Below are positions 26,245-45,838 of a stretch of DNA of 64,000 bases, one piece after another. The position numbers and the translations under genes are program-made. Below the pieces are notes generated by a model. That model was not told the DNA's origin. It was given only the letters and a program-made list of their open reading frames with translations, and searched no databases. Source of the stretch: Euprymna scolopes (taxonomy: Eukaryota); NCBI GenBank assembly GCA_053919585.1, contig CM132787.1; one strand, given 5' to 3'. Numbering within the stretch: position 1 is the stretch's first letter; each line of letters begins with the position of its first letter.

Positions 26245-26660
26245 GCGGATACTAAATCTCCATTAGTAATAAAATTATGATTATTACTTTTGTTTATAAG
26301 GATTATTAAATATTTTCTTTCTTAATCTTCGTCAGAGAACATGAAAGTTGTGCCAAACTGTTCTATTAGGCGGAATTAATTTTACTCGTCTTGGGACCGG
26401 TATTCTCTTAGTTTACCAGTTTTTATATAATAGCAACATCTCTTCCGCGAGAAAGGGGTGCAGAAAGGCGTGCAGACTGGTTTGTAAGAAAGAAGTCTTG
26501 GTAAGGAGTTGATTTTCTATTCTGAGTATTATAAGCGGTACTCTCCAGATGCGACAGCAGTACACCATGTTCGGACGTATCTGGCTCTCATACAGGGTGA
26601 GGATATCATCCGGAGTAAAATACCCTTTGGACATGATACAATGATTTTCTAGCGACTATA
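26245..26660 (-). mobile_element. Degenerate LINE RT C-terminal remnant containing one monomer of the ~38-bp satellite; duplicate at 33555-33970
   Basis: LYESQIRPNMVYCCRIW; ggaagagatgttgct (RDVA codons); downstream LIPPNRT. Confidence 0.75.
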
Positions 26661-27012
26661 GCTTATTAGATTATACCTATTTGTTAGAAAACTTTTGTGA
26701 CCTTATCTTTCGGTTATTTAAACTAATGAAAAGCGATTATCCTCAACTAGTCAACCTGGTAATAATTTTAAGATATATATAGCGGTTGGAAAAAATAATG
26801 GAAATTAATCGAAAGCAGTGGTTTTCTGATGGCAGCCCCTCATGAAATCCAACAAACAGTTTTTGTTGAAACGAGATTATACAAATAATGTTAAGCTGTC
26901 CTGTAAGTTTGGGTGTCATGGTTTTGTGCTTGTTCTTCACAAGCCTTGCAAGGGCTCTACGATCTCTATCAGACAGTTTCTGCTTTCTTCCTGAATTTTG
27001 CTTAGAGGAAAA

Positions 27013-27904
27013 CTAGCTGCGTTGCCCGGTCGTACATTACCCTTTAACATGGTATTTTAATTTATGCAGATTGCGTATATTATAATAGAATCAATACTCT
27101 ATTGATTATGATATATTACTAGGAATAATTTGCNNNNNNNNNNNNNNNNNNNNNNNNNNNNNNNNNNNNNNNNNNNNNNNNNNNNNNNNNNNNNNNNNNN
27201 NNNNNNNNNNNNNNNNNNNNNNNNNNNNNNNNNNNNNNNNNNNNNNNNNNNNNNNNNNNNNNNNNNNNNNNNNNNNNNNNNNNNNNNNNNNNNNNNNNNN
27301 NNNTGTTTATAATATCACCTCAGCAGATATTTGGACTTGATGAGTGCCCTGGAAAAGTCACTTCTGATTAATGTTAAGTCTTAAAATATGAAAACAAAGA
27401 AATAATTTGCGACGATTTTAAATAGTAGCTCTTCTTTGACCGTAAATTGAACTCATTGATAAAAAATTAAAATTAAATGGCTGGATTGAACAAAGGATCA
27501 TTCGATTTGTAGTTGAATACTCTACAACTAAACTATATCTCCAGATTATAATAATTTTTTTTTTTTAATAAAGAAAAAGTGATTTCTTGAAATTATCTTC
27601 CTTGCCAGGGCTACACAAAATATTCCCCTGTAAAAATTATTCCTTTTATCTTAAGAGAGAAAAGCTGTTTTTAAGATTGGATTTTTTAGATTTTCGAGTC
27701 TTATCGGATGAATTTCTGTACAAAACTTAACACTTAATTTCTGTACAAAACTTAACACTTAATTTCTGTACAAAACTTAAGAACACTACCAGATATATAA
27801 ATTAGCTTTGTGTGAAATTTGCAAAAGACAGGTTCAGCGGTTTCGAAACCTTTGAGGAAGGAACTCTCACACACATACACACACTAAGTGAATTTTATAT
27901 AAGA
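27013..27904 (-). mobile_element. Helitron-like element with decayed tRNA-Cys-like segment; duplicate at 34311-35211
   Basis: Minus strand TCttatataaaa start and ccgggcaacgc..CTAG|T end; 27478-27543 reads gatatagtttagttgtagagtattcaactacaaatcgaatgatcctttgttcaatcc. Confidence 0.6.
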
Positions 27905-29942
27905 GTTGCGATGTTATTTTTTTTTTTTGCCATTTCCTTATACACAGTTCCAACATCTCAGTAACTTCAGTTACAGTAGCACTCGCTACACGGGCACTAA
28001 CAATCTCCCTTCTTTAAAAATCTGACAGATCTGTCATTTAATTTGTTTTTACTGACATGCATTATCTAAATTAAAAAAAAAGAATCAGATAATCAATTCG
28101 GGACAACAATAAGGATAAATTAAATTTAAAGCAACAATTTGGTAATTATTTTCAAATTCCCCATCCCTAACATTTACAAGCAATATGAATTAAAAAAATC
28201 GATTGAGGACATTGCCAAAGCTTCACAAAAAGAAAGTGGGCTCCTTTTACCGTACTAGAAAATTACTCACACTTGAGAGTATCCTACATATCTACAAAGC
28301 TACCATTTGTCCATGCATATTTTCACACGGATACTTAACCTCCATTAGTAATGCATAAAATTATAATTTTTACTTTTGTTTATAAGAATTAATAAATATT
28401 CTATTTCTCAATCTTCGTCAAAGAACATAAAATTTGTGCCAAACTGTTCTATTATGCGGAAATTATTCTTCTCGTCCTGGGATCGATATTCTCTTTGTTT
28501 AACAGTTTTTATATAATTAGCAACATCAATTTTTAGTTTATCAGTTTTTATATAATTAGCAACATCTCTTTTTATTTTACCAGTTTATATATATAGTTAG
28601 CAACATCTCTTTTTAGTTTACCAGTCTTTATATAATTAGCAACATCTTTTTTAGTTTACTAGTTTTTATATAATAGCAACCTCTCTTTGTAGTTTACTAG
28701 TTTTTAAAATATTAGCAATATCTCTTTTAGGTAACCAGTTTTTAGATAATATCAACTTCTCTTTTAAGTTTACCAGTTTTTATAAAATTAGCAACACCCC
28801 TTTTAAGTTTACTAGTTTTTATATAACAACATCTCTTTTTAATTACCAGTTTTGATATAATTAGCAACATCGCCTTTTAGTTTACACGTTTTTATATCAT
28901 AGAAAAACTCAAGTTATGAATTTTTATATAATTAGCAACATCTCTTTTTAATTTACCAGTTTTTATATAATGAGCAACATATCTTCTAGGTTTACAAGCT
29001 ATAGTAAATTAGCAACATCTCATTATCGTGTACCAGTTTCAATATAATAGCAACCCCTTTCTTAGTGTACCAGTTTTTATATAATAGCAATATCTCTTTT
29101 TAGTTTACCAGTTTTTTTATAATAAGCAACATCAATTTTTAATTACCAGTTTTTATATAATAGCAAATTCTCTTTACCAGTTTTGATATAATTAGCAATG
29201 TCGCTTTTCAGTTTAATAGTTTCTATATAATAACAGCATCAGTTCTTAATTATGAGTTTTTGTATAATTAGCAACATCGTTTGTCAGTTTAACAGTTTTT
29301 ATATAATTAGCAACATCGCCTTTTAGTTTACAAGTTTTTATATAATAGCAACTCTCTATTTAGTTTAAGAGGTTTTATATAATTAGCAACACCTCTTTAT
29401 AATTTACCAGTGTTATATAATTAGCAAAATATCGCTTTTTAGCTTACAAGCTATAGTAAATTAGCAACATCCCTTTTTCGTGTACCAGTTTCAATATAAT
29501 AGCTTTATCTTTGCTATGTCTACCTGTTTTTATATAATAGCAACATATCTTTTTAGTTCACCAGTTTTTATATAATTAGCAAAATCTCGTTCTAGGTTAT
29601 AAGTTGTATATATTAGCAACATCTCTTTTTAACTTGCCTAGTTGTTATATAATTAGCAACTTCTCTTTTTTAGTTTACCAGGTTTTATGTAATGAAGAAC
29701 ATTAGCAACATCTGTTTTTAGTTTACCAGTTTTATATAATAGCAACTTCTCTTTTTAACTCAACTTGTATTTATATAATTAGCAACTTCTCTTTTTAGTT
29801 TACCAGTTTTTACATAATTAGCAACATTAGTAACATCTCTCTTTAGTTACCCGGCTTTATATAAAAGCAACATCTCTTTAAGTCTAGTAGTTTTTATATA
29901 ATTAGTACACATCTCTTTTTAGTTTACCAGTTTTATATAATA

Positions 29943-31228
29943 TTAGGTTGTCCGGAAAATAATGGCCAATTTTAGAGAAAAAGGATTTATTAATCAAATA
30001 GGTGACACTAGACGTTGAAATTAGTCAAAGTATTATCCTTAAACAGCCATGCATTTTTGCCATCTATCAACTAGATCATTTATGCCTCGTTGATAAAAAT
30101 TCTTTGGCTTAGATGCTAAGAAATCTTTGAAAAAAGATTCAACCTCTGGATTAGATCTGAAAGTTTTGTTGCTTAAAAAAGCGGCTAAATGCTTGAAAAA
30201 AATGGCAGTCCGTGGGTGAAAGATCTGGAGAATAAGGAGGATGTGGTAAGTTTCGTATCCCAAATCTGTGAGTTTCTGCAGTGTCATTCTCGCAACATGA
30301 GGCCGTGCATTATCGTGGAGCAGGATTGGACCACGCCTATTCACTAATGCAGGTCTCAATTTTTGTAAATGATGATGCATTTCTTCGAGTTGATTGCAGT
30401 AAACCTCTGCCGTGATGCTCTGATTAGCATCCAGAAAGCTGTAATGAATAACACCAATTGCACACCACCAAACAGTCAGCATCATCTTCTGTTGGTGAAA
30501 CTTTGGCTTTGGAAAATGTTTGGGTGGTTCATCACAATCAAGCCATTGACCTGATCGTTTCCGATTATCGTAAAGGATCGACTTTTTGTCACAGGTGACT
30601 ATTCGGTCAAGAAATGGATCATTAATGTTTCGCAAAAAGAGCATCGAACACACTTCAAAACGTCGAGCTTGTTGATTTTCATTGAGCTGTAATGTGGGAC
30701 CCATTTGTCGAGCTTTTTCACCTTGCCAATTTGCTTCAGATGGTCCAACACTGTTGAACTGCTGACACCAAGTTCCCGAGACATTTCCCTATTACTTTGC
30801 CGTGGGGTTTGCTCAACAATGGCTCTCAAATTTTCATTGTCAAGATTAGATGGCCGTCCTCTACCTTCTTCATCTTTAAGGCTCTCATCACCACTACGAA
30901 ATTTCTGAAACCACCTTCGTACTGTTCTATCACTTGTGATGCCTTCTTCTCATGCCCTATTGATATTTGCAATTGTTTGAGAAGCATTGTTACTAAGTTT
31001 AAACTCATGCAGGAAAAGTAATCGTAATTCTTCTTTTCTCATATTCCAAATTATGGGCTTATTCGCTCATAAAACGTTTTCTGAAAGAAAAAAGTAAGAA
31101 ATTATTAAAGAGCACATATAAATCAATAATCATGTTGATGTTTACCTGAAATATAATAAAAATCCTATGATAAAATCCAATTTCAAAACAGACTTCCTGA
31201 AATGGCCATTATTTTCCGGACAACCTAA
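29943..31228 (-). mobile_element. Full-length mariner (1286 bp, cecropia/Hsmar1-like)
   Basis: TIRs ttaggttgtccggaaaataatggcca, TA TSD, empty site visible at about 43600. Confidence 0.95.
30039..31042 (-). pseudogene. Mariner D,D34D transposase, disrupted by a stop and frameshifts
   Basis: MRKEELRLLFLHEFKL..., WVPH, TCDKK, HDNARPH, frameshifted YSPDLSP. Confidence 0.9.
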
Positions 31229-31742
31229 TAGCAACTTCAATTCTTAGTTTTACAGTTTTGATTAAATTAGCAACATCTATTTAAGTTTACCAGTGTTATA
31301 TAATTAAAACATTTTTACCAGTTTTTTATAATAACCACTTCTTTTCTTAGCTTACCAGTTTTGATATAATTAGCAACATCACTTTTCAGTTTGCCAGTGT
31401 TTGTATAATAGAAACTTCTCTTCTTAGTTTACCAGTTTTGATATAATTAGCAACACACCCTTTCAGTTTAATAGTTTTTATATAATGACAGCATCTCTTT
31501 TTAATTACTAGTTTTAATAAAATTAGCATCATCTCTTCTCAGTTTATCAGTTTTTATATTATTAGCAACATCTCTTTTTAGTTTACAAGTTTTATATAAT
31601 AGCAACTCTCTATTTAGTTTATTCGCTTTTATATAATTAGCAACATCCTTTTTTAATTCACCAGTTTTATATAATTAGCAAAAATCCCTTTTTGGTTTAC
31701 AAGCTATAGTAAATGAGCAACGTCTCCTTTTCTTGGACCAGT

Positions 31743-32100
31743 GGAAGAGAAAAGGGCATCCCCCACTACACCACGAAGTCTATTTTGAACTCTGTCAAGA
31801 CAGGATAAGCTGCTTCTAGCACCTCCTGCCCCGATGTGGCAACAGTACTCCATCGTTGGCCGAACCTGGCTTTTATACAGGTAGAGAATTGCATCAGGAG
31901 TGAGATTTCTACTGGAGCGGTAGAAGGATCCCACAATTTCCCAATGGATTTGATATATGTGTTCCATTTCAGATCGGGAGTAAAGGTCAATCCCAGAAGC
32001 TTGTCAAAACATGAAGGCTCCCCAAGACGAGAGCCATTCATTTCAATTGATGACAGCTGGACATCAGAGCATAGATGATGTAAAGATAGAAGCTTGGTTT
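31743..32100 (-). mobile_element. Duplicated LINE family A fragment
   Basis: YKSQVRPTMEYCCHIGAG; copy of 24370-24730. Confidence 0.9.
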
Positions 32101-35100
32101 TGATTACTAGAATTATAATTACTCGCAAGATCAGTGGACGAGGGAGAAATATACTGAATCAACAAATATGTTTTGATAAAGCTGATATTTTTGTGGATAG
32201 TGCAAAAATTAGTTTTTTGGACTAAAAACTTATAATACAAAAAAATAAAAGTTTATTAACATATCTATGAAAATAAATTGAAAACATAAAACTGACCCAA
32301 ATTAATAAGTAATAAGACTCAGAAAGTAATATAGTGATACATAGTTCAATACAAATAATAAAATTATATTGTAAGACATAATCTTTAAATTACTCATTCA
32401 GTTCAGAACTTATTAGCAGACATTGTTCCTTTTTTGCCCTGTTTCTTTCCAATGTTCCCTTTTTTACGTAAATTCTCGCTGACTTCTTTGTTCGATGCAC
32501 GTCTAAATTACCACAAGTTCCTTTTTCACACAATTACAACAATGATCATATATTATTATTATAATGATATTCGAAAATGAGACTACATCAAAGGGAGATC
32601 ACTCTCATATTCTTGTGCAGGGTTGTTAGATTGACTTTATTTGGCCTTTTTTAAAGCGTAAAATACGGTGTAAGAAAGGAACAAAACGAATATTATATAG
32701 ATACGCTGTCTAGTTGCATAATGTTGCTGATATATATCACGAAGGAATCTGTGCTATACGGGACTCCCATCCCTAAAGAAAAAAAAAGGATAATCCCTGG
32801 GAGAATGGTATAATAGCAATAGAATAAAACTACACTAACATATGCGCAAAAAAAGGAGGCGGTAATTCTAAGGAGGAGGATCCTGTGACACTAAACCATA
32901 TACAATACTACCTCTTTCCTGAAACACTGGACAGAGTTCATTAGTTTGCAATAGTATAGAAAGCTGTAGTATTAAAGATAGTAATACGGTGTGGAATGGT
33001 AAAATTGTCGCCCTAAAAAAGACATGGTTCCATTTCCGTTTGATGAAAACCAGTTTTCTTTATTTGGTGGAGACCATTTACTAGTTAGCCTGTTGTGTAC
33101 ATATCCCAAGAGCGATAGGGACCTTCTATCATGTTTGAAAGTGTCACAATGTTCAACGAGAGAGATCGGAGATGCGCCGCTGTACAACTCATGCTCTCTA
33201 CCGCTCCAAGTTATGATGCCAGGAACTACTTCGTGTGGTCATACATCGAGAACATCACCAACGTGACCTCTCACAACACCAAATCCACCCTGATCGCCGC
33301 GGTCCGTCGAGTATTCGACGAATATTCGCCGAGCTCCTGTTGGCGCTCATGGAAAAGGCATGCTCCGGGTTCCAGACCTGTATCAAGACGGTGATTAAAA
33401 CTGAAAGCGGCTACATTGAATAGATGTAAGCTCTGCTACATAAAGTTACCTGAATTGATTTTTTCAATAAAAGTTTTAAAATATAGCTGTAGTGTTGTTT
33501 TCTTTAGGGCGACTGATTTATCGTTCCACCCTGTCATATAATTTAGGTTTCAAGCGGATACTAAATCTCCATTAGTAATAAAATTATGATTATTACTTTT
33601 TTTTATAAGGATTATTAAATATTTTCTTTCTTAATCTTCGCCAGAGAACATAAAAGTTGTGCCAAACTGTTCTATTAGGTGGAATTAATTTTACTCGTCC
33701 TGGGACCGGTATTCTCTATGTTTACCAGTTTTTATATAAGAGCAACATCTCTTCCACGAGAAAGAGGTGCAGAAAAGCGTGCAGACTGGTTTGTAAGAAA
33801 GAAGTCTTGGTAAGGAGTTGATTTTCTATTCTGAGTATTATAAGCGGTACTCTCCAGGCGCGACAGCAGTACACCATGTTCGGACGTATCTGGCTCTCAT
33901 ACAGGATGAGGATATCATCCGGAGTGAAATACCCTTTGGACATGATACAATAATTTCTAGCGACCATAGCTTATTAGATTAGACCTATTTGTTAGAAAAC
34001 TTTTCTGACCTTATCTTTCGGTTATTTAAACTAATGAAAAGCGATTATCCTCAACTAGTCAACCTGGTAATAATTTTAAGATATATATAGCGGTTGGAAA
34101 AAATAATCGAAAGCTGTGGTTTTCTGATGGCAGCCCCTCATGAAATCCAGCAAACAGTTTTTGTTGAAACGAGATTATACAAATAATGTTAAGCTGTCCT
34201 GTAAGTTTGGGTGTCATGGTTTTGTGCTTTTTCTTCACAAGCCTTGCAAGGGCTCTACGATCTCTATCAGACAGTTTCTGCTTTCTTCCTGAATTTTGCT
34301 TAGAGGAAAACTAGCTGCGTTGCCCGGTCGTACATTACCCTTTAACATGGTATTTTAATTTATGCAGATTGCGTATATTATAATAGAATCAATACTCTAT
34401 TGATTATGATATATTACTAGGAATAATTTGCNNNNNNNNNNNNNNNNNNNNNNNNNNNNNNNNNNNNNNNNNNNNNNNNNNNNNNNNNNNNNNNNNNNNN
34501 NNNNNNNNNNNNNNNNNNNNNNNNNNNNNNNNNNNNNNNNNNNNNNNNNNNNNNNNNNNNNNNNNNNNNNNNNNNNNNNTGTTTGTTTATAATATCACCT
34601 CAGCAGATATTTGGACTTGATGAGTGCCCTGGAAAAGTCACTTCTGATTAATGTTAAGTCTTAAAATATGAAAACAAAGAAATAATTTGCGACGATTTTA
34701 AATAGTAGCTCTTCTTTGACCGTAAATTGAACTCATTGATAAAAAATTAAAATTAAATGGCTGGATTGAACAAAGGATCATTCGATTTGTAGTTGAATAC
34801 TCTACAACTAAACTATATCTCCAGATTATAATAAATTTGTTTTTTTTTAATAAAGAAAAAGTGATTTGTTGATATTATTTTCCTTGCCAGGGCTACACAA
34901 AATATTCCCCTGTAAAAATTATTCCTTTTATCTTAAGAGAGAAAAGCTGTTTTTAAGATTGGATTTTTTAGATTTTCGAGTCTTATCGGATGAATTTCTG
35001 TACAAAACTTAACACTTAATTTCTGTACAAAACTTAACACTTAATTTCTTTACAAAACTTAACACTTAATTTCTGTACAAAACTTAAGAACACTACCAGA

Positions 35101-35798
35101 TATATAAATTAGCTTTGTGTGAAATTTGCAAAAGACAGGTTCAGCGGTTTCGAAACCTTTGAGGAAGGAACTCTCACACACATACACACACTAAGTGAAT
35201 TTTATATAAGAGTTGCGATGTTTTCCTTTTTTTTTGCCATTTCCTTATACACAGTTCCAACATCTCAGCAACTTCAGTTACAGTAGCACTCGCTACACGG
35301 GCACTAACAATCTCCCTTCTTTGAAAATCTGACAGATCTGTCATTTAATTTGTTTTTACTGACATGCATTATCTAAATTAAAAAAAAAAGAATCAGATAA
35401 TCAATTCGGGACAACAATAAGGATAAATTAAATTTAAAGCAACAATTTGGTAATTATTTTCAAATTCCCCATCCCTAACATTTACAAGCAATATGAATTA
35501 AAAAAATCGATTGAGGACATTGCCAAAGCTTCACAAAAAGAAAGTGGGCTCCTTTTACCGTACTAGAAAATTACTCACACTTGAGAGTATCCTACATATC
35601 TACAAAGCTACCATTTGTCCATGCATATTTTCACACGGATACTTAACCTCCATTAGTAATGCATAAAATTATAATTTTTACTTTTGTTTATAAGAATTAA
35701 TAAATATTCTATTTCTCAATCTTCGTCAAAGAACATAAAATTTGTGCCAAACTGTTCTATTATGCGGAAATTATTCTTCTCGTCCTGGGATCGATATT

Positions 35799-36060
35799 CT
35801 CTTTGTTTAACAGTTTTTATATAATTAGCAACATCAATTTTTAGTTTATCAGTTTTTATATAATTAGCAACATCTCTTTTTATTTTACCAGTTTATATAT
35901 ATAGTTAGCAACATCTCTTTTTAGTTTACCAGTCTTTATATAATTAGCAACATCTTTTTTAGTTTACTAGCTTTTATATAATAGCAACCTCTCTTTGTAG
36001 TTTACTAGTTTTTAAAATATTAGCAACATCTCTTTTAGGTTACCAGTTTTTAGATAATAT
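35799..36060. repeat. ~38-bp minisatellite, array 2, left part
   Basis: Same units as 28491-28752. Confidence 0.95.
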
Positions 36061-39000
36061 ATTTTTTTTTATTACATTTTCACCCCAAACAAGGCACATT
36101 GCCACTTTGGTGTAGGGGGCTACTATCAGGGGAAACATCGACTGGGGTACTATGTAGGGATTAGGGCAGCGAGATGTTGGTTCACGTTGCACTTGAACTT
36201 ATGCATGTCAGTACAGTTGGGGAAGCAGTGACCTGGAATGGAATTCCAAAGTCTAGCTGTTCTGGGGAAGAAACTACTGGAGTAGAAAGATCTTTTACAT
36301 CTAGGGATCTCTACAGTGTGGGGGTGGGATTTTGCAGCTTGTCGGGTCTGTCGAGGGTGTTCACGTCGTGGGGGCACGTGCTTGCAGTTCTTCAGAGCAT
36401 TCACCATTATAATACTTGTAGAACAGGCAGAGGGATGCAACGTTTCGACGATGGGACAGAGGCTGAAGTTTAGATGCCAGTTTAGGGCCTATCAGATTTG
36501 CGACTCTCTTTTGAACCCTGTCAAGGAGCGATAGACTAGTAGCCGATGCACCGGCCCAAATATGACAGCAATACTCCATACATGGGCGAATAGTGGCCTT
36601 ATAGAGGTACAGGATACTTTCGGGTGTTAGAAGTTTTCTAGCACGGTAGAGAGAGCCCACCTTCCTTGCAGCGGCCCTGGCAATGCTCTCGATGTAATTG
36701 TTCCAACTCATGTTTCCTGTGAACGTTAGGCCAAGGAGCTTGAGAGACGTACTCTCAGATAAAGAGTCGTTGGCCATTGCTATAGGTGGTAGAGAAGGTT
36801 TCTTGTAATTATTGAATGAGACCAGTTTTGTCTTGGTGGCATTGAACGTTACCATCCATTTTTGTCCCCATTCCACTACTGATTGGAGGTCATCCTCTAG
36901 TGTTTCTGCCATTACTTTAGATATATGTTCATTTGTTTTCCTGTCGTGCCTGTTATAGAGTGTGGTGTCATCAGCATATATACCCATCTCAGAGGCAATT
37001 TTGTCGGAGAGGTCATTTATGAATATCAGGAACAGCAGAGGTCCAAGGATAGATCCCTGGGGCACTCCCGCATTTATATCATATTGTTTAGATGTACGAC
37101 CGTCGAGGACAACCTGGATTTTTCTCTTATCTAAGAAGGATTTAATTATGTTAAGTATTCTACCAGTGATACCGTAAGATCTAATCTTCCTGAGGAGACC
37201 CTCATGCCATACCCTGTCAAAAGCCTTAGATATATCTAGAGCTACCGCTCTGCCCTCTCCCGCTTTGTCCAGTGAATGGTATATGCGTTCAGAGATTACA
37301 GTGAGGATGTCTGCCGTGGAACGGGCTTGTCTAAATCCATATTGATGGTCGGTCAGAAGTTTAGCATCTGTAAGGTGCTGGACTAGAGCATGGTTAATTA
37401 AGGTCTCAAATATTTTGGCAAAAAGTGGGAGGAGGCTAATAGGGCGATAATTTAATGGGTCAGTTCTTTCGCCAGAATTCTTGAATACTGGTACTACAGA
37501 AGCAGTTTTCCAACAGCTCGGAAAACAAGATTCATTAAGGCATTTGTTGTAGAGTTTGGAGAGAACTGGAGCTACTTCGGCTGAGCACTTTTTTAATAGC
37601 ACAGCTGGGATGAGGTCGGGTCCACATGCTTTGGAAGTGTCAAGGTTTTTTATGATAGCATGGACCTGAGCAGGGGTGATTTTCAGATCGTCTAGCGTGG
37701 CGTCTGTCCGCATAGGAAATTGAGGTAGGGGGTGGTTTAGAGGGTCCAGTGTGGAGTTTGAGGCAAGTCGACTGGCAAGCATGTTAGCCTTCTCGGTTGC
37801 TGAGCAAAGAACCTCGTGATTGTTAGTTAGTGGTGGAATTGTTGATTGCCCATTATTTACTACACTGTTGTAGATTTTCCAGAAGTCACGAGTTCCTAGT
37901 TTTTGTGCTTCGATGCGCTTTTTAGTGGTTTCCGTAAATTCCCTCTTAGCTGTCGCTATTTCTTTCTTAACGTTACTTATAGCTTCTATGTACTTCTGTC
38001 TGTTTGAACTGGACTTATGTCGGTTAAACCTGCGGAATGCATGCTGCCTTTGAGCAATGGCAGTTGCGCAAGTCGAAGTAAACCATTAGGGAGAGTGGGG
38101 CTTGCTAAAGAATTTCCGCATGGGAACATGCGCTTCGATTGCAGTTTTGAACCATTCAGTGGTCTCGGTTGCACACTGTTCAGCAGGAAGAGAAAAAATA
38201 TTTCCCCATGGGGCGTCTCTGATAAGATCTCTGATAGCTTCCCAGTCAGCCTTATTATAATATCTCGTTGTTTTGGGCACTGGCTCTTCAGTTTTGGGTC
38301 TAGAGTTTAGGGCGATTTCAACCATTATCACCGCATGATCAGCGTTCCCAAGTGGGCTGTCGGCTTTCGTTACACAATCATCAGGAACTGTGGTCAGAAA
38401 CAGATCTAATAGTGATGCGTGTTGTTCTTCCTGATCAGGGAAGCGGGTTGGAAAAGTAACAATTTGCGATAGGGAGTGAGATACAGAGAAGCTATGAGTT
38501 GCGCTACCTGCTGCATCTGTGTAAGTAGAGAATCCAAGCCAGTTTTTGTGATGGACATTAAAGTCGCCAAATACATGTACTTGGGCGCTAGTGTCGAAGG
38601 AGAGTGCTGTGTCTATGCTGTCAGATACTTTGTTTATTATGGTGCAGTCTTGGGTCGAGGGAGAGCGGTAGAGAAAGTAAAAGTAGCTAATGTTGTGTTG
38701 CATGATTAGTCTAAAGCACATAAAGGCTTGATCATCCGTTTCTAGGTTTGTTTCTCTAGTCAAGGGAAGGGTATTACGAATGTAAACTCCAAGTCCGTGC
38801 ATATGTCTTTCAGAGTCCTTACGGCAGAGTGGGAGATATCCAGGCATGTTAAAGTAGTTAGAGGGGATGGAGGAGTGTAGGTTAGTCTCACTTAGTGCTA
38901 AGATATCCGGGGTATTTGTTAGGAGAAATACTTCGACATCAGCTAAATTAGTTCTAAGCCCACGGATATTTGTGAATGCAAGCCTCAAGGGAGGAGGCAA

Positions 39001-42000
39001 GTTGGATTTGTTTGACCCTAAGCCTGGTTTAAGCTTATTTTTAGATTGTACTGTCATCATGTTTTTTAACGAGTTTCAGTTGGGTTAGGATAAACCGAAC
39101 AGGAGATTATGCAGAATATCCCACATGCCCCACAAGTAGACCATCAGCTGACCCTCCATCAACTAGGACTGTGGCCTCAGGAAAGCCCACCGGGGATGAG
39201 TGTAGGGTCCCTTTCCATGCGCGCCATGGCACTGCAAACAACCTGATATTATTCAACTGTTGATGGAGCAGCCGCTCTAAGCGCTACCAAAGAGTTAGGG
39301 CTCCTGTACTACCAGTCGAAACAGCAGCCAGTAACTGTCAATCCGGTACCCTCAACCCATCAGAGGAAGGTCAACCCAATCTAATTGCTCAGGCATATGT
39401 GGTACTCAAGCATTCTCAAGTGCCCAGCTTTAGGGATGGGGTGTGTCGGGAGTGGGGAAACGGCGTTCATTGCCCTAGACAAGAAACAAGATCTACCACT
39501 GGGTGTTTCTGTCGAATCACTGTGATAGTATCTCTGCGCCTGACTAATAGGCAAAGAAGGAGTATGGAAGCCGGGCGATAGGCAGGACCTATCTACTCCT
39601 TAAGCATTTTAGGTTTGCAAACCGGTAATTTGATTGAGTCACCAGCTTAGTTTCAGAGTTTTCCTTCTCCTAGACGGATGATCTGGAAAGATCTACTGGG
39701 TCCGTCACCACTGAGAGGGTTTGCTCCGCGCCTGGGTTCTAATCCAGGTATTTCTGCGACCCCGCGTGGTTAGTTAATGTTATTGGGTTAGTTTGTAGAG
39801 GTTATATCTGCTAAATAGTTACACTCCTCAAAGTGGATTAGGGACATTGTTATTTCATTGTTACTCGATAAAGGGGTTGAGTAGAGCTCATGCAGTGTAA
39901 GCAACTATGATTGTAAGGAGGCTTGTTAGGAGGAGATAATGTGGTCTGAGGCTTTCTCTTTTGTATATATATATATTTTTTATTTTTTCCTTTTATTTTT
40001 TTTATTTTATTTTTTTTTATTCATGTGAGCTTGGGTCTAGTATAATATTAGAGTGTGAGTAGGTGTTAAGAATTGAACTACGAGTTGTGCCCAAACTATA
40101 TTTTAGATGATAGCAGGGCATGAGATGCGAGTGCAATATAGTACGGGTAAAACAGTAAGTTTTGAGTCATGTGTAATTTGGTAAATAGATATATGGGCTG
40201 GTTTTAGTAGGTAACCTGGTTAAAAAAGGGCATTACTATGCTTTCATTTCCATTGCTATTGGGAGAGGGTATAGGTAAAAATTCGTGCAGTGGAAGCAGC
40301 TAAATTTGCTACAGTATTGGATTGAGAGAGACGAGTTAATGTATGGTTAGATATAGTTTTGTAAGTTTAGGAATGAATGATTAGATATGGTTTAGTAGGT
40401 TTAGGATTAGGATAAAGTGTTAGGGTATGATTTACTTGTTATTAGAAATTCTGATTTGGTGCCCAAACCGAATATTTAGTAAGACTGAAAGATAAGCTAT
40501 GCTCAGTATAGATACAAGAGAACATTTGATATGGAGTACAGTTATACCTGATAGATATAGGTTATTGCATATGTTGTAAATATAGTTAAATATAGATGGA
40601 TGGATAAGTAGTATTGTATACGAATGCATGGAATTTTGGGCAATTTGAGTAAGTTGCCTTTAGACTACAACGAAGGAGAATGACTTCGCCTTTCTCTTAA
40701 TATCCGGAAGTTTTTATTTCAATGAGTACCGGTTTAGTTTGTGTAATGATTATTGCAATACTATCTCTTAATAAAGAGATATTAATGGTTGCTGTTCATT
40801 ATAGATTACTTTAAGTCAATGTATAGGACTATGGCTAGTAAGTATTTACTTAGAAGCTTGGTTTTGGGTTAGGAGTTTTAATCAGGAGCATGCCTAGGAA
40901 ATTTTGGTTGTTAATGGGTATCGATTTACGAGTCTGTTAGGGTCAAGGGCGGAGAGCAAGGACCCCTCTAAGTTACGTGACAACGGATTAGGTTAAGTGG
41001 CAACTTGAGAAATAGAGCAGTTTGATTTGTTAGTGATCAGGAGAAAGAGAATTTAAGTAAAAAATAAAAAAGTTTGTCATGCAAACAGACAATGCAGTCA
41101 TCTTGGAGGTAAAGTATCTATAGGGGGTACTTAGTATACAACCAGCAGTAGTTTTGAGAGGAATTTTAGGTACAATAGTTTCATGGTTTGTTGTACAAGT
41201 CCGTAGTCTAGGTCAGGGACGAAGCACTTCTAATATTGCAACTGGGTGTATCTAATTTTAAAAGTAGTTGAATAGAGTATTATGAGGTGTTCTACTTAGC
41301 TTAGGGATAGAAAGAAAATTTAAGGTAATATTCAGAGTGATACAAGCAATTTCATGAGGATTAGATATATGATCACTGGATGTTATGCTGCTCAGAAGAA
41401 TTCTTGTATCTATTCGGAAGGATGTCTTGGTGATATAAGATTTGAGAAATTAAGAGTCTGAGGATACAGAAAGTTGTGAGCTGATGAGGATTCAGTACAG
41501 GCGATTATATATAGTTAACAAAGGTGGTTTAGTTTAGTACGCACGTATTGTACATATTAAGTATACTGCTTCAGTTCTATCCTCTATTGTAAAGGAAACC
41601 CCGTCTGCATTTCGATTGGCAATTTTGTCAAAAGAGGAAATTTAAAACAGCTTATCTAATTTTTGATGATATCAGTTTATAGACAATTGTACAGACTGAT
41701 AGAATGTTGTGTCAGACATAGGAGCCCATCGTCTTCGTATTTTGATGAAATGATGGATCAAGGGATCAAGAGCATAGGTGTCCGGAAAGGAAATGGCAGT
41801 GTACAAGGAATGGGGGGGTCATTGATATCTTATTAACGTTATTTTAATTGAGAAAATTAACATTAAAAAAAAATAACCTTGCGATGGCTGATTTATATTA
41901 AGTAACGTACTTAAATAAAGTTTTCATATCCTCTAAATAAATTAGCATAATTTCTTTTTTTTTTTAACCGAGTTTATCTTTACTATAGCATTGACTTATT

Positions 42001-42440
42001 ATTTAAGTGAGATGGGATTTGTAAACTGCGAAATGGTCTATTTAAGTGGAGAAAATTATCGGTTACAATATGCCTGGAAATGTAAAGAATATTTGCTTTA
42101 AATTTCATGCTAAACAGTTAAAGATTTTACTTAGCTTTGGTTTTCTTTTCTTGGACACTCGAGACTAAAAACCAGGGTGGTCGTTTCTCTTGGCCTCGCA
42201 AGGTCAAATGGCATTTGTAGTACCAAGATGCTATCTATTCAGTAGAGGACTTGGTAGGCTACTTTAGGGGGAGGGGGTCACTTAGTGAAAAGTTCACATT
42301 TGGCGGCGCGACAATGTTTCCTCGCTTGTGTATCATTTTCAGAGATATTAATGTTAACAATTGAATACGCGTTCCAAACAAATATGATGGAAATAAAATA
42401 ATAGCATATATAACGTAAAATAATAGCATATATAACGTAC
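36061..42440 (-). mobile_element. 6.4-kb insertion: single-ORF CR1/L2-group LINE with A-tail and ~3.4-kb non-coding 5' region
   Basis: Absent from duplicate copy 1; AATAT at both junctions (36056-36060, 42441-42445); T-tract at the left end. Confidence 0.8.
36150..39060 (-). pseudogene. LINE ORF2 (APE endonuclease plus reverse transcriptase, ~970 codons), one in-frame TAA at 38086 and one frameshift near 36385
   Basis: TNIRGL, LSET, GDFN, LDLFL, ADH (APE); YRPISLL, QYGFR, DISKAFD, GVPQGSILGP, YADD, LLGL (RT); SSFFPRTARLWN tail. Confidence 0.95.
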
Positions 42441-45400
42441 AATATCAACTTCTCTTTTAAGTTTACCAGTTTTTATAAAATTAGCAACACCCCTTTTAAG
42501 TTTACTAGTTTTTATATAACAACATCTCTTTTTAATTACCAGTTTTGATATAATTAGCAACATCGCCTTTTAGTTTACACGTTTTTATATCATAGAAAAA
42601 CTCAAGTTATGAATTTTTATATAATTAGCAACATCTCTTTTTAATTTACCAGTTTTTATATAATGAGCAACATATCTTCTAGGTTTACAAGCTATAGTAA
42701 ATTAGCAACATCTCATTATCGTGTACCAGTTTCAATATAATAGCAACCCCTTTCTTAGTGTACCAGTTTTTATATAATAGCAATATCTCTTTTTAGTTTA
42801 CCAGTTTTTTTTATAATAAGCAACATCACTTTTTAATTACCAGTTTTTATATAATAGCAAATTCTCTTCTTAGTTTACCAGTTTTGATATAATTAGCAAT
42901 GCCGCTTTTCAGTTTAATAGTTTCTATATAATAACAGCATCAGTTCTTAATTATGAGTTTTTGTATAATTAGCAACATCGTTTGTCAGTTTAACAGTTTT
43001 TATATAATTAGCAACATCGCCTTTTAGTTTACAAGTTTTTATATAATAGCAACTCTCTATTTAGTTTAAGAGGTTTTACATAATTAGCAACACCTCTTTA
43101 TAATTTACCAGTGTTATATAATTAGCAAAATATCGCTTTTTAGCTTACAAGCTATAGTAAATTAGCAACATCCCTTTTTCGTGTACCAGTTTCAATATAA
43201 TAGCTTTATCTTTGCTTAGTCTACCTGTTTTTATATAATAGCAACATATCTTTTTAGTTCACCAGTTTTTATATAATTGGCAAAATCTCGTTCTAGGTTA
43301 TAAGTTGTATATATTAGCAACATCTCTTTTTAACTTGCCTAGTTGTTATATAATTAGCAACTTCTCTTTTTTAGTTTACCAGATTTATGTAATGAGGAAC
43401 ATTAGCAACATCTGTTTTTAGTTTACCAGTTTTATATAATAGCAACTTCTCTTTTTAGTTTACCAGTTTTTACATAATTAGCAACATTAGTAACATCTCT
43501 TTTTAGTTACCCGGCTTTATATAAAAGCAACATCTCTTTAAGTCTAGTAGTTTTTATATTATTAGTACACATCTCTTTTTAGTTTACCAGTTTTATATAA
43601 TAGCAACTTCAATTCTTAGTTTTACAGTTTTGATTAAATTAGCAACATCTATTTAAGTTTACCAGTGTTATATAATTAAAACATTTTTACCAGTTTTTTA
43701 TAATAACCACTTCTTTTCTTAGCTTACCAGTTTTGATATAATTAGCAACATCACTTTTCAGTTTTCCAGTGTTTGTATAATAGAAACTTCTCTTCTTAGT
43801 TTACCAGTTTTGATATAATTAGCAACACACCCTTTCAGTTTAATAGTTTTTATATAATGACAGCATCTCTTTTTAATTAGCAGTTTTAATAAAATTAGCA
43901 TCATCTCTTCACAGTTTATCAGTTTTTATATTATTAGCAACATCTCTTTTTAGTTTACAAGTTTTATATAATAGCAACTCTCTATTTAGTTTATTCGTTT
44001 TTATATAATTAGCAACATCCTTTTTTAACTCACCAGTTTTATATAATTAGCAAAAATCCCTTTTTAGTTTACAAGCTATAGCAACGTCTCCTTTTCTTGG
44101 ACCAGTTTCAATATAATACCAACGTCTTTTCTTAGTGGACCATATAGTGGTTTATATAATTGCAACATCTCTTTTCTTCTCAATTTACCAGCTTTTACTT
44201 AATATAAACTTCTCTTCTTAGTTTACCAGTTTTGATTAAATTAGCAATATCCCTTTTTAGTTTACCAGTTTTATATAATAGCAAAATTTCTACTTATTTT
44301 ACCAGTGTTTTATAATAGCCACTTCTCTTCTTAGTTTACCAGTTTTTATAGAATTAGCAACATCAATTTTAGTTTACCAGTCTTTATTATTTAGTAACAT
44401 TCCTTTTTTAGTTTACTAGTTTTTATATAATAACAAAAGCTCTTTTTAATTACTAGTTTTTATATAATTAGCAACATCCATTCTCAGTTTCCCAGGTTTT
44501 ATATAATTAGCAACATCTCTTTTAGTTTACAAGGTTTTATATAATAGCAACTCTATTTAGTTTATGAATTTTTATATAATTAGCAATATCTCTTTTTAAT
44601 TTATCAGTTTTAATATAATTAGTAACATCTCTTTTTAGTATGCAAGCTATAGTAAATTAGCAACATCTCTTTTTAGTGTAACAGTTCGAATATAATTGCA
44701 CCCCCTTTCTTATTGTACCAGTTCTTATATAATAGTTACATCTTTTAGTTTACCAATTTTCATATAATTAACAACATCGCTTTTTAGTTTACCAGTTTTA
44801 TATAATAGCAACATCTCTTTTTAACTTAACCAGTTTTTATATAATTAGCAACATCTCCTTTTACCAGGTTATATATAATGAGCAACATTAGTAACATCCC
44901 TTTTTAGTTGACCAGTTTTTATATAATAGCAACATCTCTTTTTAGTTTACCAGTTTTTTTATATAATTAGCAACCTTAGCAACACATCTTTTAAATTTAC
45001 TAGTTTTATATAATAGCAACGTTTATTTTAACTTAACAAGTTTTTATATAATTAGCCACTTCTATTATAGTTTACCAGTTTTTACATAGTTAGCAACATT
45101 AAAAACATCTTTTTTAGTTTATAAGTTTAATATAATAGCAACATCTCTTTTTAGTTTACCAGTTTTTATATAATATCCACTTCTCTTCTTAGTTAACCAG
45201 TTTTATATAATAGCAACATCTTTTCTCAATTTACCAGTTGTTATATAATAGCCACTTCTCTTCTTAGTGGAACATCTTTGATTAAATTAGCAACATCACT
45301 TTTTTGTTTTCCAGTTTTATATAATAGCAACATTTCCTCTTATTTTACCAATTTTTTTATAATAGTCACTTCTCCTCTTAGTTTACCAGTTTTTATATAA

Positions 45401-45638
45401 TTAGCAACACCCCTTTTCAGTTTAATAGTTTTTATATAATAGCAACTTCTATTCTTAGTTTACCAGTTTTATATAATAGCATCATCGCTTCTTTGTTTAT
45501 CAGTGTTTTATATAATAGCAACATCTCTTTTTAATTTACCAGTTTTTCTGTAATTGCAACTTTTCTTCTTAGTTTATTTGTTTTTACATAATCGCAATAT
45601 CTCTTCTTATTTTACCAGTTTTCATATAATAGCAATAT
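42441..45638. repeat. ~38-bp minisatellite, array 2, right part
   Basis: Visible periodicity; 42441-44106 matches array 1 without the mariner. Confidence 0.95.
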
Positions 45639-45770
45639 TTAAGCTGGTAGATCTAGCGCTAGTCCCCCCCATCTTTTGAGGATAAAAGAGTCTCCAATCT
45701 AATAGGTCAAGGCCTATCAACCAAACTGCAACCTCTGTTCCATCGCTTTAATCTTTCGTCCTTCTGTCAG

Positions 45771-45838
45771 TTTTTTTTTTTTTACACAGTGATCACCACT
45801 TATCAAGGCCCGGAAGCCACTCAGGGATAAGGGTTATT
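45771..45838 (-). mobile_element. Extremely 5'-truncated LINE family A (3' tail only); similar at 46044-46120 (minus) and 49860-49930 (plus)
   Basis: taacccttatcc..gagtggc..gccttgataag..gtga..A-tail, as at 53885-53950. Confidence 0.8.

What the first reader, a model, noticed from the sequence alone, without database searches (positions are those of the whole stretch)
26245..31742. Birth of a satellite caught beside its unexpanded ancestor: ~38-bp array derived from LINE RT coding sequence
Seen: 26245-26444 and 28328-28530 are paralogous. At 26404-26444 a single monomer sits between TCTCTT direct repeats inside a decayed LINE (minus strand agagatgttgct, the RDVA codons of the SHRRDVA motif). 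At the paralogous position the same unit is expanded into kilobases of array (28491-31742, 35799-36060, 42441-45638). Established: minisatellites can be seeded by slippage between short flanking direct repeats. Inference: seed, source element and product all lie within about 2 kb.
Basis: partly seen in the sequence, partly recalled or inferred. Interest (0 to 1): 0.7.

Follow-up and report, generated by a model that had tools for sequence, protein, structure and literature searches.

The report
Old minisatellite from a Helitron–LINE junction
A 39-base repeat found only at this locus grew from a 35-base stretch spanning the end of a Helitron transposon and the LINE gene it landed in; an unexpanded copy of that stretch survives 2 kb away, but the array is old, and this genome holds several other arrays built from LINE coding sequence.

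Summary
26239-26440 and 28321-28527 are 86% identical. One 35-nt unit sits between TCTCTT hexamers at 26404-26444, and the same unit (consensus 38-39 nt) forms kilobases of array.

The interpretation needs five corrections.
1. The shared flank is not LINE. It is the last ~170 nt of a ~0.6-kb non-autonomous Helitron. The unit is a chimera of 8 nt of Helitron end and 27 nt of minus-strand LINE that carries the RDVA codons.
2. The array did not expand inside a paralogous LINE. The Helitron end plus array lies inserted in a different, plus-strand LINE, whose two halves flank it with ~13 nt missing.
3. The three array blocks are two copies of one array. A 7.3-kb tandem duplication made them, and a mariner-like MITE and a 6.4-kb LINE inserted later.
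4. It is a single-locus minisatellite of ~3.5 kb, not a satellite. The unit occurs nowhere else in the 5.9-Gb assembly.
5. It is old. Monomers are 74% identical pairwise, with no higher-order structure.

Probes for three LINE motifs found at least five other LINE-coding-derived arrays in this genome. Earlier notes of this scan report more on other DNA of the same genome. This is a tidy but ordinary example of a known process.

The parts
24054..25465 (-). LINE-X, a decayed LINE ORF2 C-terminal part with ..LQSLSHRRDVASLSLLYHYFHGKCSSEL.. and tail. Position 24369/24370 is the left breakpoint of the 7.3-kb tandem duplication.
   Evidence: ORFs; tblastn with LINE-I protein aa 317-473, E 1.7e-47; junction alignment A2
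26239..26411 (+). Seed copy (Y): truncated 3' end of a non-autonomous Helitron (family T), ending ..GGTATTCTCTTAG, followed by host T at 26412. 26295-26411 matches the T family. 26239-26294 is shared only with the array-side copy.
   Evidence: hairpin CCGTCC/GGACGG, CTAG, flanking T in 14 of 16 clearly read copies; 5' end A|TCTCTATTTATATAAAG in other copies
26404..26444 (.). Unexpanded 35-nt unit (26404-26438) plus the second TCTCTT (26439-26444): 8 nt of Helitron end and 27 nt on the LINE side, including the RDVA codons on the minus strand.
26412..26640 (-). LINE-Y fragment (ORF2 C-terminal region ..YFTPDDILTLYESQIRPNMVYCCRIW .. PLSRGRDVA), cut at its 3' side by the Helitron.
   Evidence: tblastn E 3.7e-8 and 3.2e-9; DNA alignment with other LINE copies through ..GAAGAGAYGTTGC
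27134..27303 (.). Assembly gap between seed and array. Its length is estimated and it was not filled.
28167..28320 (+). Left half of the plus-strand LINE-P (LINE-I aa 352-402, ..KATICPCI), into which the Helitron end plus array is inserted.
   Evidence: tblastn E 3.4e-16; DNA alignment A3
28321..28490 (+). Array-side copy (Z) of the truncated Helitron end, 86% identical to 26239-26404 and sharing 14 derived changes with it.
28491..29942 (+). Array, duplication copy 1, first part (~38 units).
   Evidence: TRF; monomer listing
29943..31228 (.). Mariner-like MITE (TIR TTAGGTTGTCCGGAAAATAATGGCC, TA target duplication) inserted in one monomer. Absent from copy 2.
   Evidence: high depth as a dispersed repeat
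31229..31742 (+). Array, copy 1, second part. It ends at the duplication junction 31742|31743.
31743..36060 (+). Second copy of the duplicated unit: LINE-X' (31743-32812), seed copy Y' (33548-33749), gap (34432-34579), LINE-P left half, Helitron end Z' (35629-35797) and the array start (35798-36060).
   Evidence: self-comparison at 94-97%; A1
36061..42440 (-). Full-length LINE (LINE-I; APE endonuclease and RVT_1) inserted into array copy 2. Target duplication AATAT.
42441..45633 (+). Array, copy 2, remainder (~83 units). 42441-43485 equals 28748-29786 at 97.6%, and 43598-44106 equals 31226-31742 at 97%.
45634..45785 (+). Right half of LINE-P (about aa 407-458: ..IW.. KRVSNLIGQGLSTKLQPLFHR..). 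About 13 nt of LINE-P (GAGTATTGCTGTC in LINE-I) are missing between the halves.
   Evidence: tblastn E 1.4e-11; A3

Best explanation
A locus-specific, old minisatellite whose unit was born at the junction of two transposons.

Shown:
- A ~0.6-kb non-autonomous Helitron (5' TC after host A; 3' hairpin, CTAG, then host T) sits with its 3' end against a decayed minus-strand LINE just downstream of the RRDVA codons.
- At that junction a TCTCTT in the Helitron end and a TCTCTT in the LINE's Arg-Arg codons lie 35 nt apart.
- A ~210-nt copy of this junction (170 nt of Helitron end plus the unit) lies 2 kb away, inserted in a different, plus-strand LINE with ~13 nt of target lost.
- In that copy the unit stands as ~90 tandem copies (3.46 kb).

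Inferred:
- The patch was copied locally at the DNA level, for example by templated capture at a break.
- The first duplication arose by misalignment of the two TCTCTT repeats (Haber-Louis type slippage or unequal exchange).
- Growth continued by unequal exchange until the units had diverged too far to misalign.

Later events (shown):
- A 7.3-kb tandem duplication has one breakpoint inside the array and the other in a neighbouring LINE, next to that LINE's own RRDVA codons.
- A mariner-like MITE then inserted into copy 1 and a 6.4-kb LINE into copy 2.

The array has no ORF and no Rfam match. Nothing points to a function.
For: - Paralogy of the junction.
- Helitron identity of the flank: 22 other copies share the sharp boundary and hairpin; of the 16 read clearly, 14 have host T after the CTAG/CTAA end. 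The 5' end is A|TCTCTATTTATATAAAG in about 10 copies, and the family has hundreds to more than 1,400 candidate loci.
- LINE identity of the other side: the seed is continuous with 230 nt of LINE ORF2 C-terminal coding sequence, and LINE-I has Exo_endo_phos and RVT_1.
- Seed and array flank are sisters: 14 shared derived changes against the Helitron consensus, the same truncation point and the same Helitron|LINE junction.
- The junction is unique: the 30-32-nt core at up to 2-3 mismatches occurs only at this locus in 5.9 Gb.
- Insertion into LINE-P: the flanks are LINE-I aa 352-402 and about 407-458 on the plus strand.
- Unit versus consensus: the seed unit equals the array consensus except for the T-run length and one T.
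- Age: monomers are 85% identical to the consensus and 74% pairwise, with no lag structure or gradient. The two duplication copies are 97.6% identical in register.
- Duplication junction and TE insertions with target duplications.
- Array present in contigs of two samples of organism A and of organism B at 97-99%.
Against: - The right end of the array shows no remnant of the seed's LINE body, so the size of the copied patch, and whether it already held several units, are unknown.
- The period is 38-39 nt in the array against 35 in the seed.
- The T run of the array (TCTTTTTAG) is nearer to the Helitron family consensus (TTCTTTTAG) than to the seed (TCTCTTAG). The donor may therefore have been an earlier state of the junction rather than today's 26404-26444.
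- Only ~13 nt (GAAGAGATGTTGC) of the LINE-side part align securely to other LINE copies. The next ~20 nt align only if a 14-nt deletion is assumed.
- The array-side flank has more private changes than the seed (10 vs 3), which is unexplained.
- A collapse of a short array back to one unit at 26404-26444 would look the same as never having expanded.
Confidence: 0.75

Rival explanations
1. One reading: two paralogous decayed LINE copies, one of which expanded a piece of its own RT-coding sequence in place, so that the whole shared flank and the unit are LINE.
For: The unit contains the RDVA codons, and the seed is continuous with LINE coding sequence. True in-place LINE expansions of this kind exist elsewhere in the genome, at L089 and L091.
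Against: The shared 165-nt flank belongs to a Helitron family with its own sharp terminus. The array's right flank is a plus-strand LINE half that continues the sequence left of 28321, not a minus-strand LINE body.
Confidence: 0.05
2. Reverse polarity: the array came first, and the single unit at 26404-26444 is a collapsed or copied array edge that joined a LINE at the RDVA motif by microhomology.
For: A single unit between direct repeats is also the end state of array contraction. The array T run resembles the Helitron consensus more than the seed does.
Against: In the seed both halves of the unit are continuous with their parent elements: 120 nt or more of Helitron on one side and 230 nt of LINE on the other. 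The array has neither LINE body nor a second parent. The seed is closer to the Helitron consensus than the array flank is (3 vs 10 private changes). An 11-13-nt match to LINE in every unit would need a separate origin.
Confidence: 0.1
3. The 7.3-kb 'tandem duplication' is an assembly artefact, with two haplotypes laid in tandem. There would then be one seed and one array, with MITE and LINE insertion polymorphisms.
For: N gaps at the same relative place in both copies. 3% divergence and TE presence/absence could be allelic in a polymorphic invertebrate.
Against: The junction 31742|31743 is seamless, has no N and only ~2 nt of shared letters, and joins an array unit to the inside of a LINE. Copy 1 is preceded by that LINE's own tail. 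Contigs could not test the junction.
Confidence: 0.12
4. The Helitron end itself drove the amplification, for example by faulty termination of rolling-circle replication at the hairpin/CTAG reiterating end plus flank.
For: The unit starts in the last 8 nt of a Helitron. Earlier notes of this scan report Helitron-associated arrays in this genome (unchecked).
Against: None of 22 other copies of this Helitron family has a tandem repeat at its 3' junction. The Helitron copy here is a 170-nt 3' fragment without a 5' end, so it could not be mobilised. Comparable arrays arise from LINE sequence with no Helitron nearby.
Confidence: 0.04

Closest known systems
Transposon-derived minisatellites initiated between short direct repeats (Haber and Louis model; survey by Ahmed and Liang 2012, PMC3389668)
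   Same: The unit is cut out of transposon sequence. In the unexpanded state it is bounded by a 6-nt direct repeat, within the 5-20-nt range reported for 300 human cases. Growth is by local duplication of units.
   Different: Here the unit spans the junction of two different transposons (Helitron end and LINE coding sequence). The expanded copy is a relocated patch, not the original site.
Satellites and minisatellites derived from LINE or other retrotransposon coding sequence (examples tabulated in Paço et al. 2019, PMC6947457, such as the LINE-1-derived PROsat of Phodopus and CR1-derived chicken centromeric repeats)
   Same: A short stretch of LINE ORF2 sequence is reiterated. In this genome clean in-place examples exist at L089:1861-3056 and L091:1282-1427.
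   Different: Those are abundant or centromeric satellites, or lie inside their parent LINE. This array is 3.5 kb, occurs at a single locus, and only about a third to three quarters of its unit is LINE.
Tandem repeats carried inside Helitron/Helentron non-autonomous elements of bivalves and DINE-TR1 of Drosophila (PMC7492417; Dias et al. 2015 as cited in PMC6947457)
   Same: A non-autonomous Helitron is physically associated with a tandem array, reportedly in a mollusc genome.
   Different: There the repeats are internal to the element and spread with it. Here the array lies outside the 3' terminus, is not carried by other copies (0 of 22) and did not spread.

Membership tests
Minisatellite born by slippage between flanking direct repeats (Haber-Louis) | Unexpanded state with one unit bounded by a short direct repeat | tested here: met
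   TCTCTT at 26404-26409 and 26439-26444, 35 nt apart
Minisatellite born by slippage between flanking direct repeats (Haber-Louis) | Array period equals the distance between the direct repeats, and each unit boundary carries one fused copy of the repeat | tested here: inconclusive
   Period 38-39 against 35. The difference is a longer T run and one extra T. Unit boundaries read ..CATC|TCTTTTTAG, compatible with a fused TCTCTT
Minisatellite born by slippage between flanking direct repeats (Haber-Louis) | Both flanks of the array match both flanks of the unexpanded unit | tested here: not met
   The left flank matches (86%). The right flank does not and is the other half of a plus-strand LINE. 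This is explained by relocation of a patch, not by in-place growth.
Satellite DNA (multi-locus or long heterochromatic arrays) | Many copies at several loci or very long arrays | tested here: not met
   All 14 and 13 genome-wide matches of the unit core lie in this window. The array is 3.46 kb. Contig depth over the array is 8-40, against 1e3-1e6 over neighbouring dispersed repeats.
Helitron (the shared flank, family T) | 5' TC and 3' CTRR termini, insertion between host A and T | tested here: met
   3' end ..TATTCTTCTAG (or CTAA) followed by T in 14 of 16 copies read. 5' end TCTCTATTTATATAAAG after host A in most clear boundaries, one directly after another element's CTAG.
Helitron (the shared flank, family T) | Short palindromic hairpin a few nt before the 3' end | tested here: met
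   CCGTCC-NNN-GGACGG 7 nt before CTAG, conserved in 22 copies
Helitron (the shared flank, family T) | Rep/helicase protein (autonomous partner) | not tested
   The ~0.6-kb copies are non-coding. No autonomous partner was sought.
LINE (non-LTR retrotransposon), source of the RDVA part | Homology to an ORF2 with endonuclease and reverse transcriptase | tested here: met
   LINE-I has RVT_1 (E 3.3e-37) and Exo_endo_phos_2 (E 1.7e-10). The seed's LINE fragment matches its aa 381-409 (E 3.7e-8) and continues to ..PLSRGRDVA. This region lies C-terminal to the Pfam RT domain. The clade was not determined.

The most novel reading that the evidence does not exclude
The LINE family here may be an unusually productive source of minisatellites. 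Probing the genome with only three 10-nt LINE motifs at 34-42-nt spacing found at least five further arrays built from ORF2 C-terminal coding sequence (units of 21-39 nt, some 96-97% homogeneous). This could reflect a LINE-specific mechanism, such as template switching during or after reverse transcription, or nicking by the LINE endonuclease, rather than generic slippage. The array in this window would then be one old product of that process.
Probability: 0.12. Interest if true: 0.5.

Novelty: new member of a known kind. Interest (0 to 1): 0.2.

Why it matters
The locus keeps every stage of a minisatellite's history. These are the two parent transposons, their junction with the flanking direct repeats, a relocated copy that expanded, and the later duplication and transposon insertions that date it. 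That makes it a good teaching example, and a small data point for how tandem repeats start, which Ahmed and Liang found unexplained for most transposon-derived repeats in human. It does not change what is known. Transposon-derived minisatellites are common, and this genome holds several cleaner and younger examples.

Tried and rejected
- Reading the array's right flank as a minus-strand LINE continuing from the unit. By eye it looked plausible, but tblastn places a plus-strand LINE there and blastn finds no similarity to the seed's LINE body.
- Reading the duplication junction as homologous recombination within the RDVA motif. Both breakpoints lie 15-22 nt beyond a GCAACGTCTC motif, but the actual switch shares only ~2 nt.
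- Higher-order repeats or a gradient along the array. TRF lists 76-77-nt periods, but the identity of monomers at lags 1-8 is flat (0.73-0.745), and identity to the consensus or to the seed shows no trend.
- Coding or RNA function of the array. There is no ORF of 50 aa or more inside it and no Rfam family in 24000-46500.
- RRDVA as a special hotspot. Control motifs from two other LINE regions also hit LINE-derived arrays, so no specificity is shown.
- Testing the duplication junction and copy number with public reads. Only short contigs were available, so depth and the junction could not be judged.
- Relating the MITE to the mariner-like remnant at 25630-26115: no similarity.
It was rerun by reference.
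- The organism was not identified here. 'Mollusc' comes from earlier notes only.
Full report
**Observation.**
blastn aligns 26239-26440 with 28321-28527 at 86% over 207 columns, E 5.5e-65, and MAFFT agrees (A1).
- Homology begins abruptly at 26239/28321 and ends after one repeat unit.
- TCTCTT stands at 26404-26409 and 26439-26444. The reverse complement of the RDVA codons stands at 26432-26443.
- Tandem Repeats Finder reports a 38-39-nt array at 28490-29941, 31314-31731, 35798-36058 and 42446-45635, with 67-83% matches.
- The assembly gap 27134-27303 lies between seed and array. No feature crosses it, so only the stated ~2-kb distance depends on its estimated length. I did not try to fill it.

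**Large-scale structure.** A self-comparison shows a 7.3-kb tandem duplication.
- 24370-25465 matches 31743-32812 at 94%.
- 25508-27133 matches 32818-34431 at 97%.
- 27304-28752 matches 34584-36060 at 97%.
- 28748-29786 matches 42441-43485 at 97.6%.
- 31226-31742 matches 43598-44106 at 97%.
- Both copies have an N gap at the same relative place.

So there are two seeds (26404 and 33713) and two copies of one array.
- Copy 1 (28491-31742) carries a 1,286-bp mariner-like MITE at 29943-31228, with a TA target duplication inside one monomer.
- Copy 2 (35798-36060 plus 42441-45633, 3.46 kb) is split by a 6.4-kb LINE with target duplication AATAT. That LINE encodes an APE endonuclease and RVT_1.
- At the duplication junction, copy 1 follows the array of copy 2 up to 31742. 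It then switches to position 24370 inside a neighbouring minus-strand LINE, with ~2 nt shared and no N (A2).
- I take the duplication as real (about 0.85). The available public runs were only short contigs and could not test it.

**What the shared flank is.** A genome search with the seed region found hundreds of candidate loci.
- Twenty-two other copies, aligned, all share one sharp boundary. Read on the window's plus strand it is ..GAATTAATTTTACTCGTCCTGGGACGGGTATTCTTCTAG, followed by T, and the sequence beyond is unrelated.
- This is a 6-bp-stem hairpin lying 7 nt before CTAG, with host T after it in 14 of the 16 copies read clearly.
- About 600 nt upstream, copies begin A|TCTCTATTTATATAAAGTTAG. 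One begins directly after another element's CTAG.
- These are the defining ends of a non-autonomous Helitron. So 26239-26411 and 28321-28490 are truncated Helitron 3' ends, not LINE tail.
- The seed and the array flank share 14 changes against the family consensus, the same truncation point and the same junction, so they are sisters.

**What the unit is.**
- In the seed, the Helitron ends at 26411 (..TCTCTTAG).
- From 26412 the minus strand reads as LINE ORF2 C-terminal sequence..YFTPDDILTLYESQIRPNMVYCCRIW .. PLSRGRDVA (tblastn E 3.7e-8 and 3.2e-9).
- At DNA level it follows other LINE copies through GAAGAGAYGTTGC. The next ~20 nt align only if a 14-nt deletion is assumed.
- The 35-nt unit is therefore 8 nt of Helitron end plus 27 nt of its LINE target.
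- The first TCTCTT lies in the Helitron end, where a change shared by seed and array flank created it. The second lies in the LINE's Arg-Arg codons.
- The array consensus equals the seed unit except for a longer T run and one extra T.
- Because each half of the unit is continuous with its parent element only in the seed, the single-copy arrangement is the ancestral type.

**Where the array sits.**
- The sequence right of the array has no similarity to the seed's LINE body.
- With the protein of the intact LINE as query, the left neighbour of the array-side Helitron end (28167-28319, plus strand) matches aa 352-402 (E 3.4e-16). The right neighbour of the array (45684-45785, plus strand) matches aa 425-458 (E 1.4e-11).
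- The DNA alignment shows the plus-strand LINE resuming at about 45634, with ~13 nt missing (A3).
- The Helitron end plus array is thus an insertion into another LINE.
- The junction core occurs nowhere else in the 5.9-Gb assembly: 14 and 13 matches at up to 2-3 mismatches, all in this window.
- Two independent transpositions landing 2 kb apart are therefore unlikely. I infer a local DNA-level copy of a ~210-nt patch, followed by expansion.

**Age and dynamics.**
- Forty-nine well-delimited monomers of copy 2 are 85% identical to their consensus and 74% pairwise. There is no lag structure and no gradient towards either end.
- The two duplication copies of the array are 97.6% identical in register over 1 kb, so unit turnover had essentially stopped before the duplication.
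- The array has no ORF and no Rfam match.
- Short contigs from two samples of one organism and from a second labelled organism lie on the array at 97-99% and at low depth, consistent with a single-copy locus shared among close relatives.

**How ordinary it is.**
- None of 22 other copies of this Helitron has a tandem repeat at its 3' junction, so the Helitron end looks incidental.
- Pattern searches for three LINE motifs repeated at 34-42-nt spacing found further arrays made of ORF2 C-terminal coding sequence:
  - a 35-nt unit x34 in place inside a LINE (L089:1861-3056, 97% matches);
  - a 36-nt unit x81 (L090:1963-4884);
  - a 21-nt RRDVANL unit x7 in place (L091:1282-1427);
  - a 38-nt LDRVQ unit on C33;
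  - a 39-nt YCCHIW unit on C28.
- Earlier notes of this scan list more LINE-, SINE- and Helitron-derived arrays in the same genome, including one at 18074-20745 of this window. I treat those as leads only.
- In human, 23% of minisatellites and satellites derive from transposons, and 300 of them are flanked by 5-20-nt direct repeats (PMC3389668).

**Verdict.**
The unit is a Helitron-LINE junction chimera, the expanded copy is a relocated patch, the array is old and private to this locus, and the three blocks are two copies of one array.
- It is a new member of a well-known kind, and of low general interest.

Noticed in passing
L089:1861-3056 (G000:C36:82230861-82232056): A young 35-nt x34 minisatellite (97% matches) built in place from the LQSLSHRRDVA codons of a minus-strand LINE. 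LINE sequence lies on both sides.
   Followed up: partly
L090:1963-4884 (G000:C30:66145463-66148384); L091:1282-1427 (G000:C32); G000:C33:46933620-46938456; G000:C28:69415237-69419341: More LINE-coding-derived arrays: a 36-nt SHRRDVA unit x81, a 21-nt RRDVANL unit x7 in place, a 38-nt LDRVQ unit over ~4.8 kb, and a 39-nt YCCHIW unit over more than 4 kb. The flanks of the C30, C33 and C28 arrays were not read.
   Followed up: partly
window 24370-31742 and 31743-45638: A 7.3-kb tandem duplication. One breakpoint lies inside the array and the other inside a LINE, 22 nt beyond that LINE's own GCAACGTCTC (RDVA) motif. Both copies have an assembly gap at the same relative place.
   Followed up: partly
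window 29943-31228: A 1.29-kb mariner-like MITE (TIR TTAGGTTGTCCGGAAAATAATGGCC, TA duplication). Contigs of one other organism (run X4) show it at very high depth, with a ~715-bp internally deleted form.
   Followed up: no
window 25630-26115 (+): Remnant of a mariner/Tc1-like transposase C-terminus (ends ..SGYIE) just left of the seed's Helitron fragment. No termini were identified.
   Followed up: no
L037 (G000:C10:19011958-19015050) and L080 (G000:C2:68917904-68921034): Helitron T copies stacked head to tail. Two copies lie 633 bp apart in L037. In L080 a T 5' end follows directly on another element's CTAG.
   Followed up: no
window 28321-28490 vs 26239-26404: Against the Helitron consensus, the array-side flank has 10 private changes and the seed flank 3. 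The asymmetry is unexplained; possible causes are mutagenic surroundings of the array or conversion.
   Followed up: no
window 27711-27780 and 34993-35087: A perfect 25-nt tandem repeat (AATTTCTGTACAAAACTTAACACTT) with 2.8 copies in duplication copy 1 and 3.8 in copy 2. This is one unit gained or lost since the duplication.
   Followed up: no
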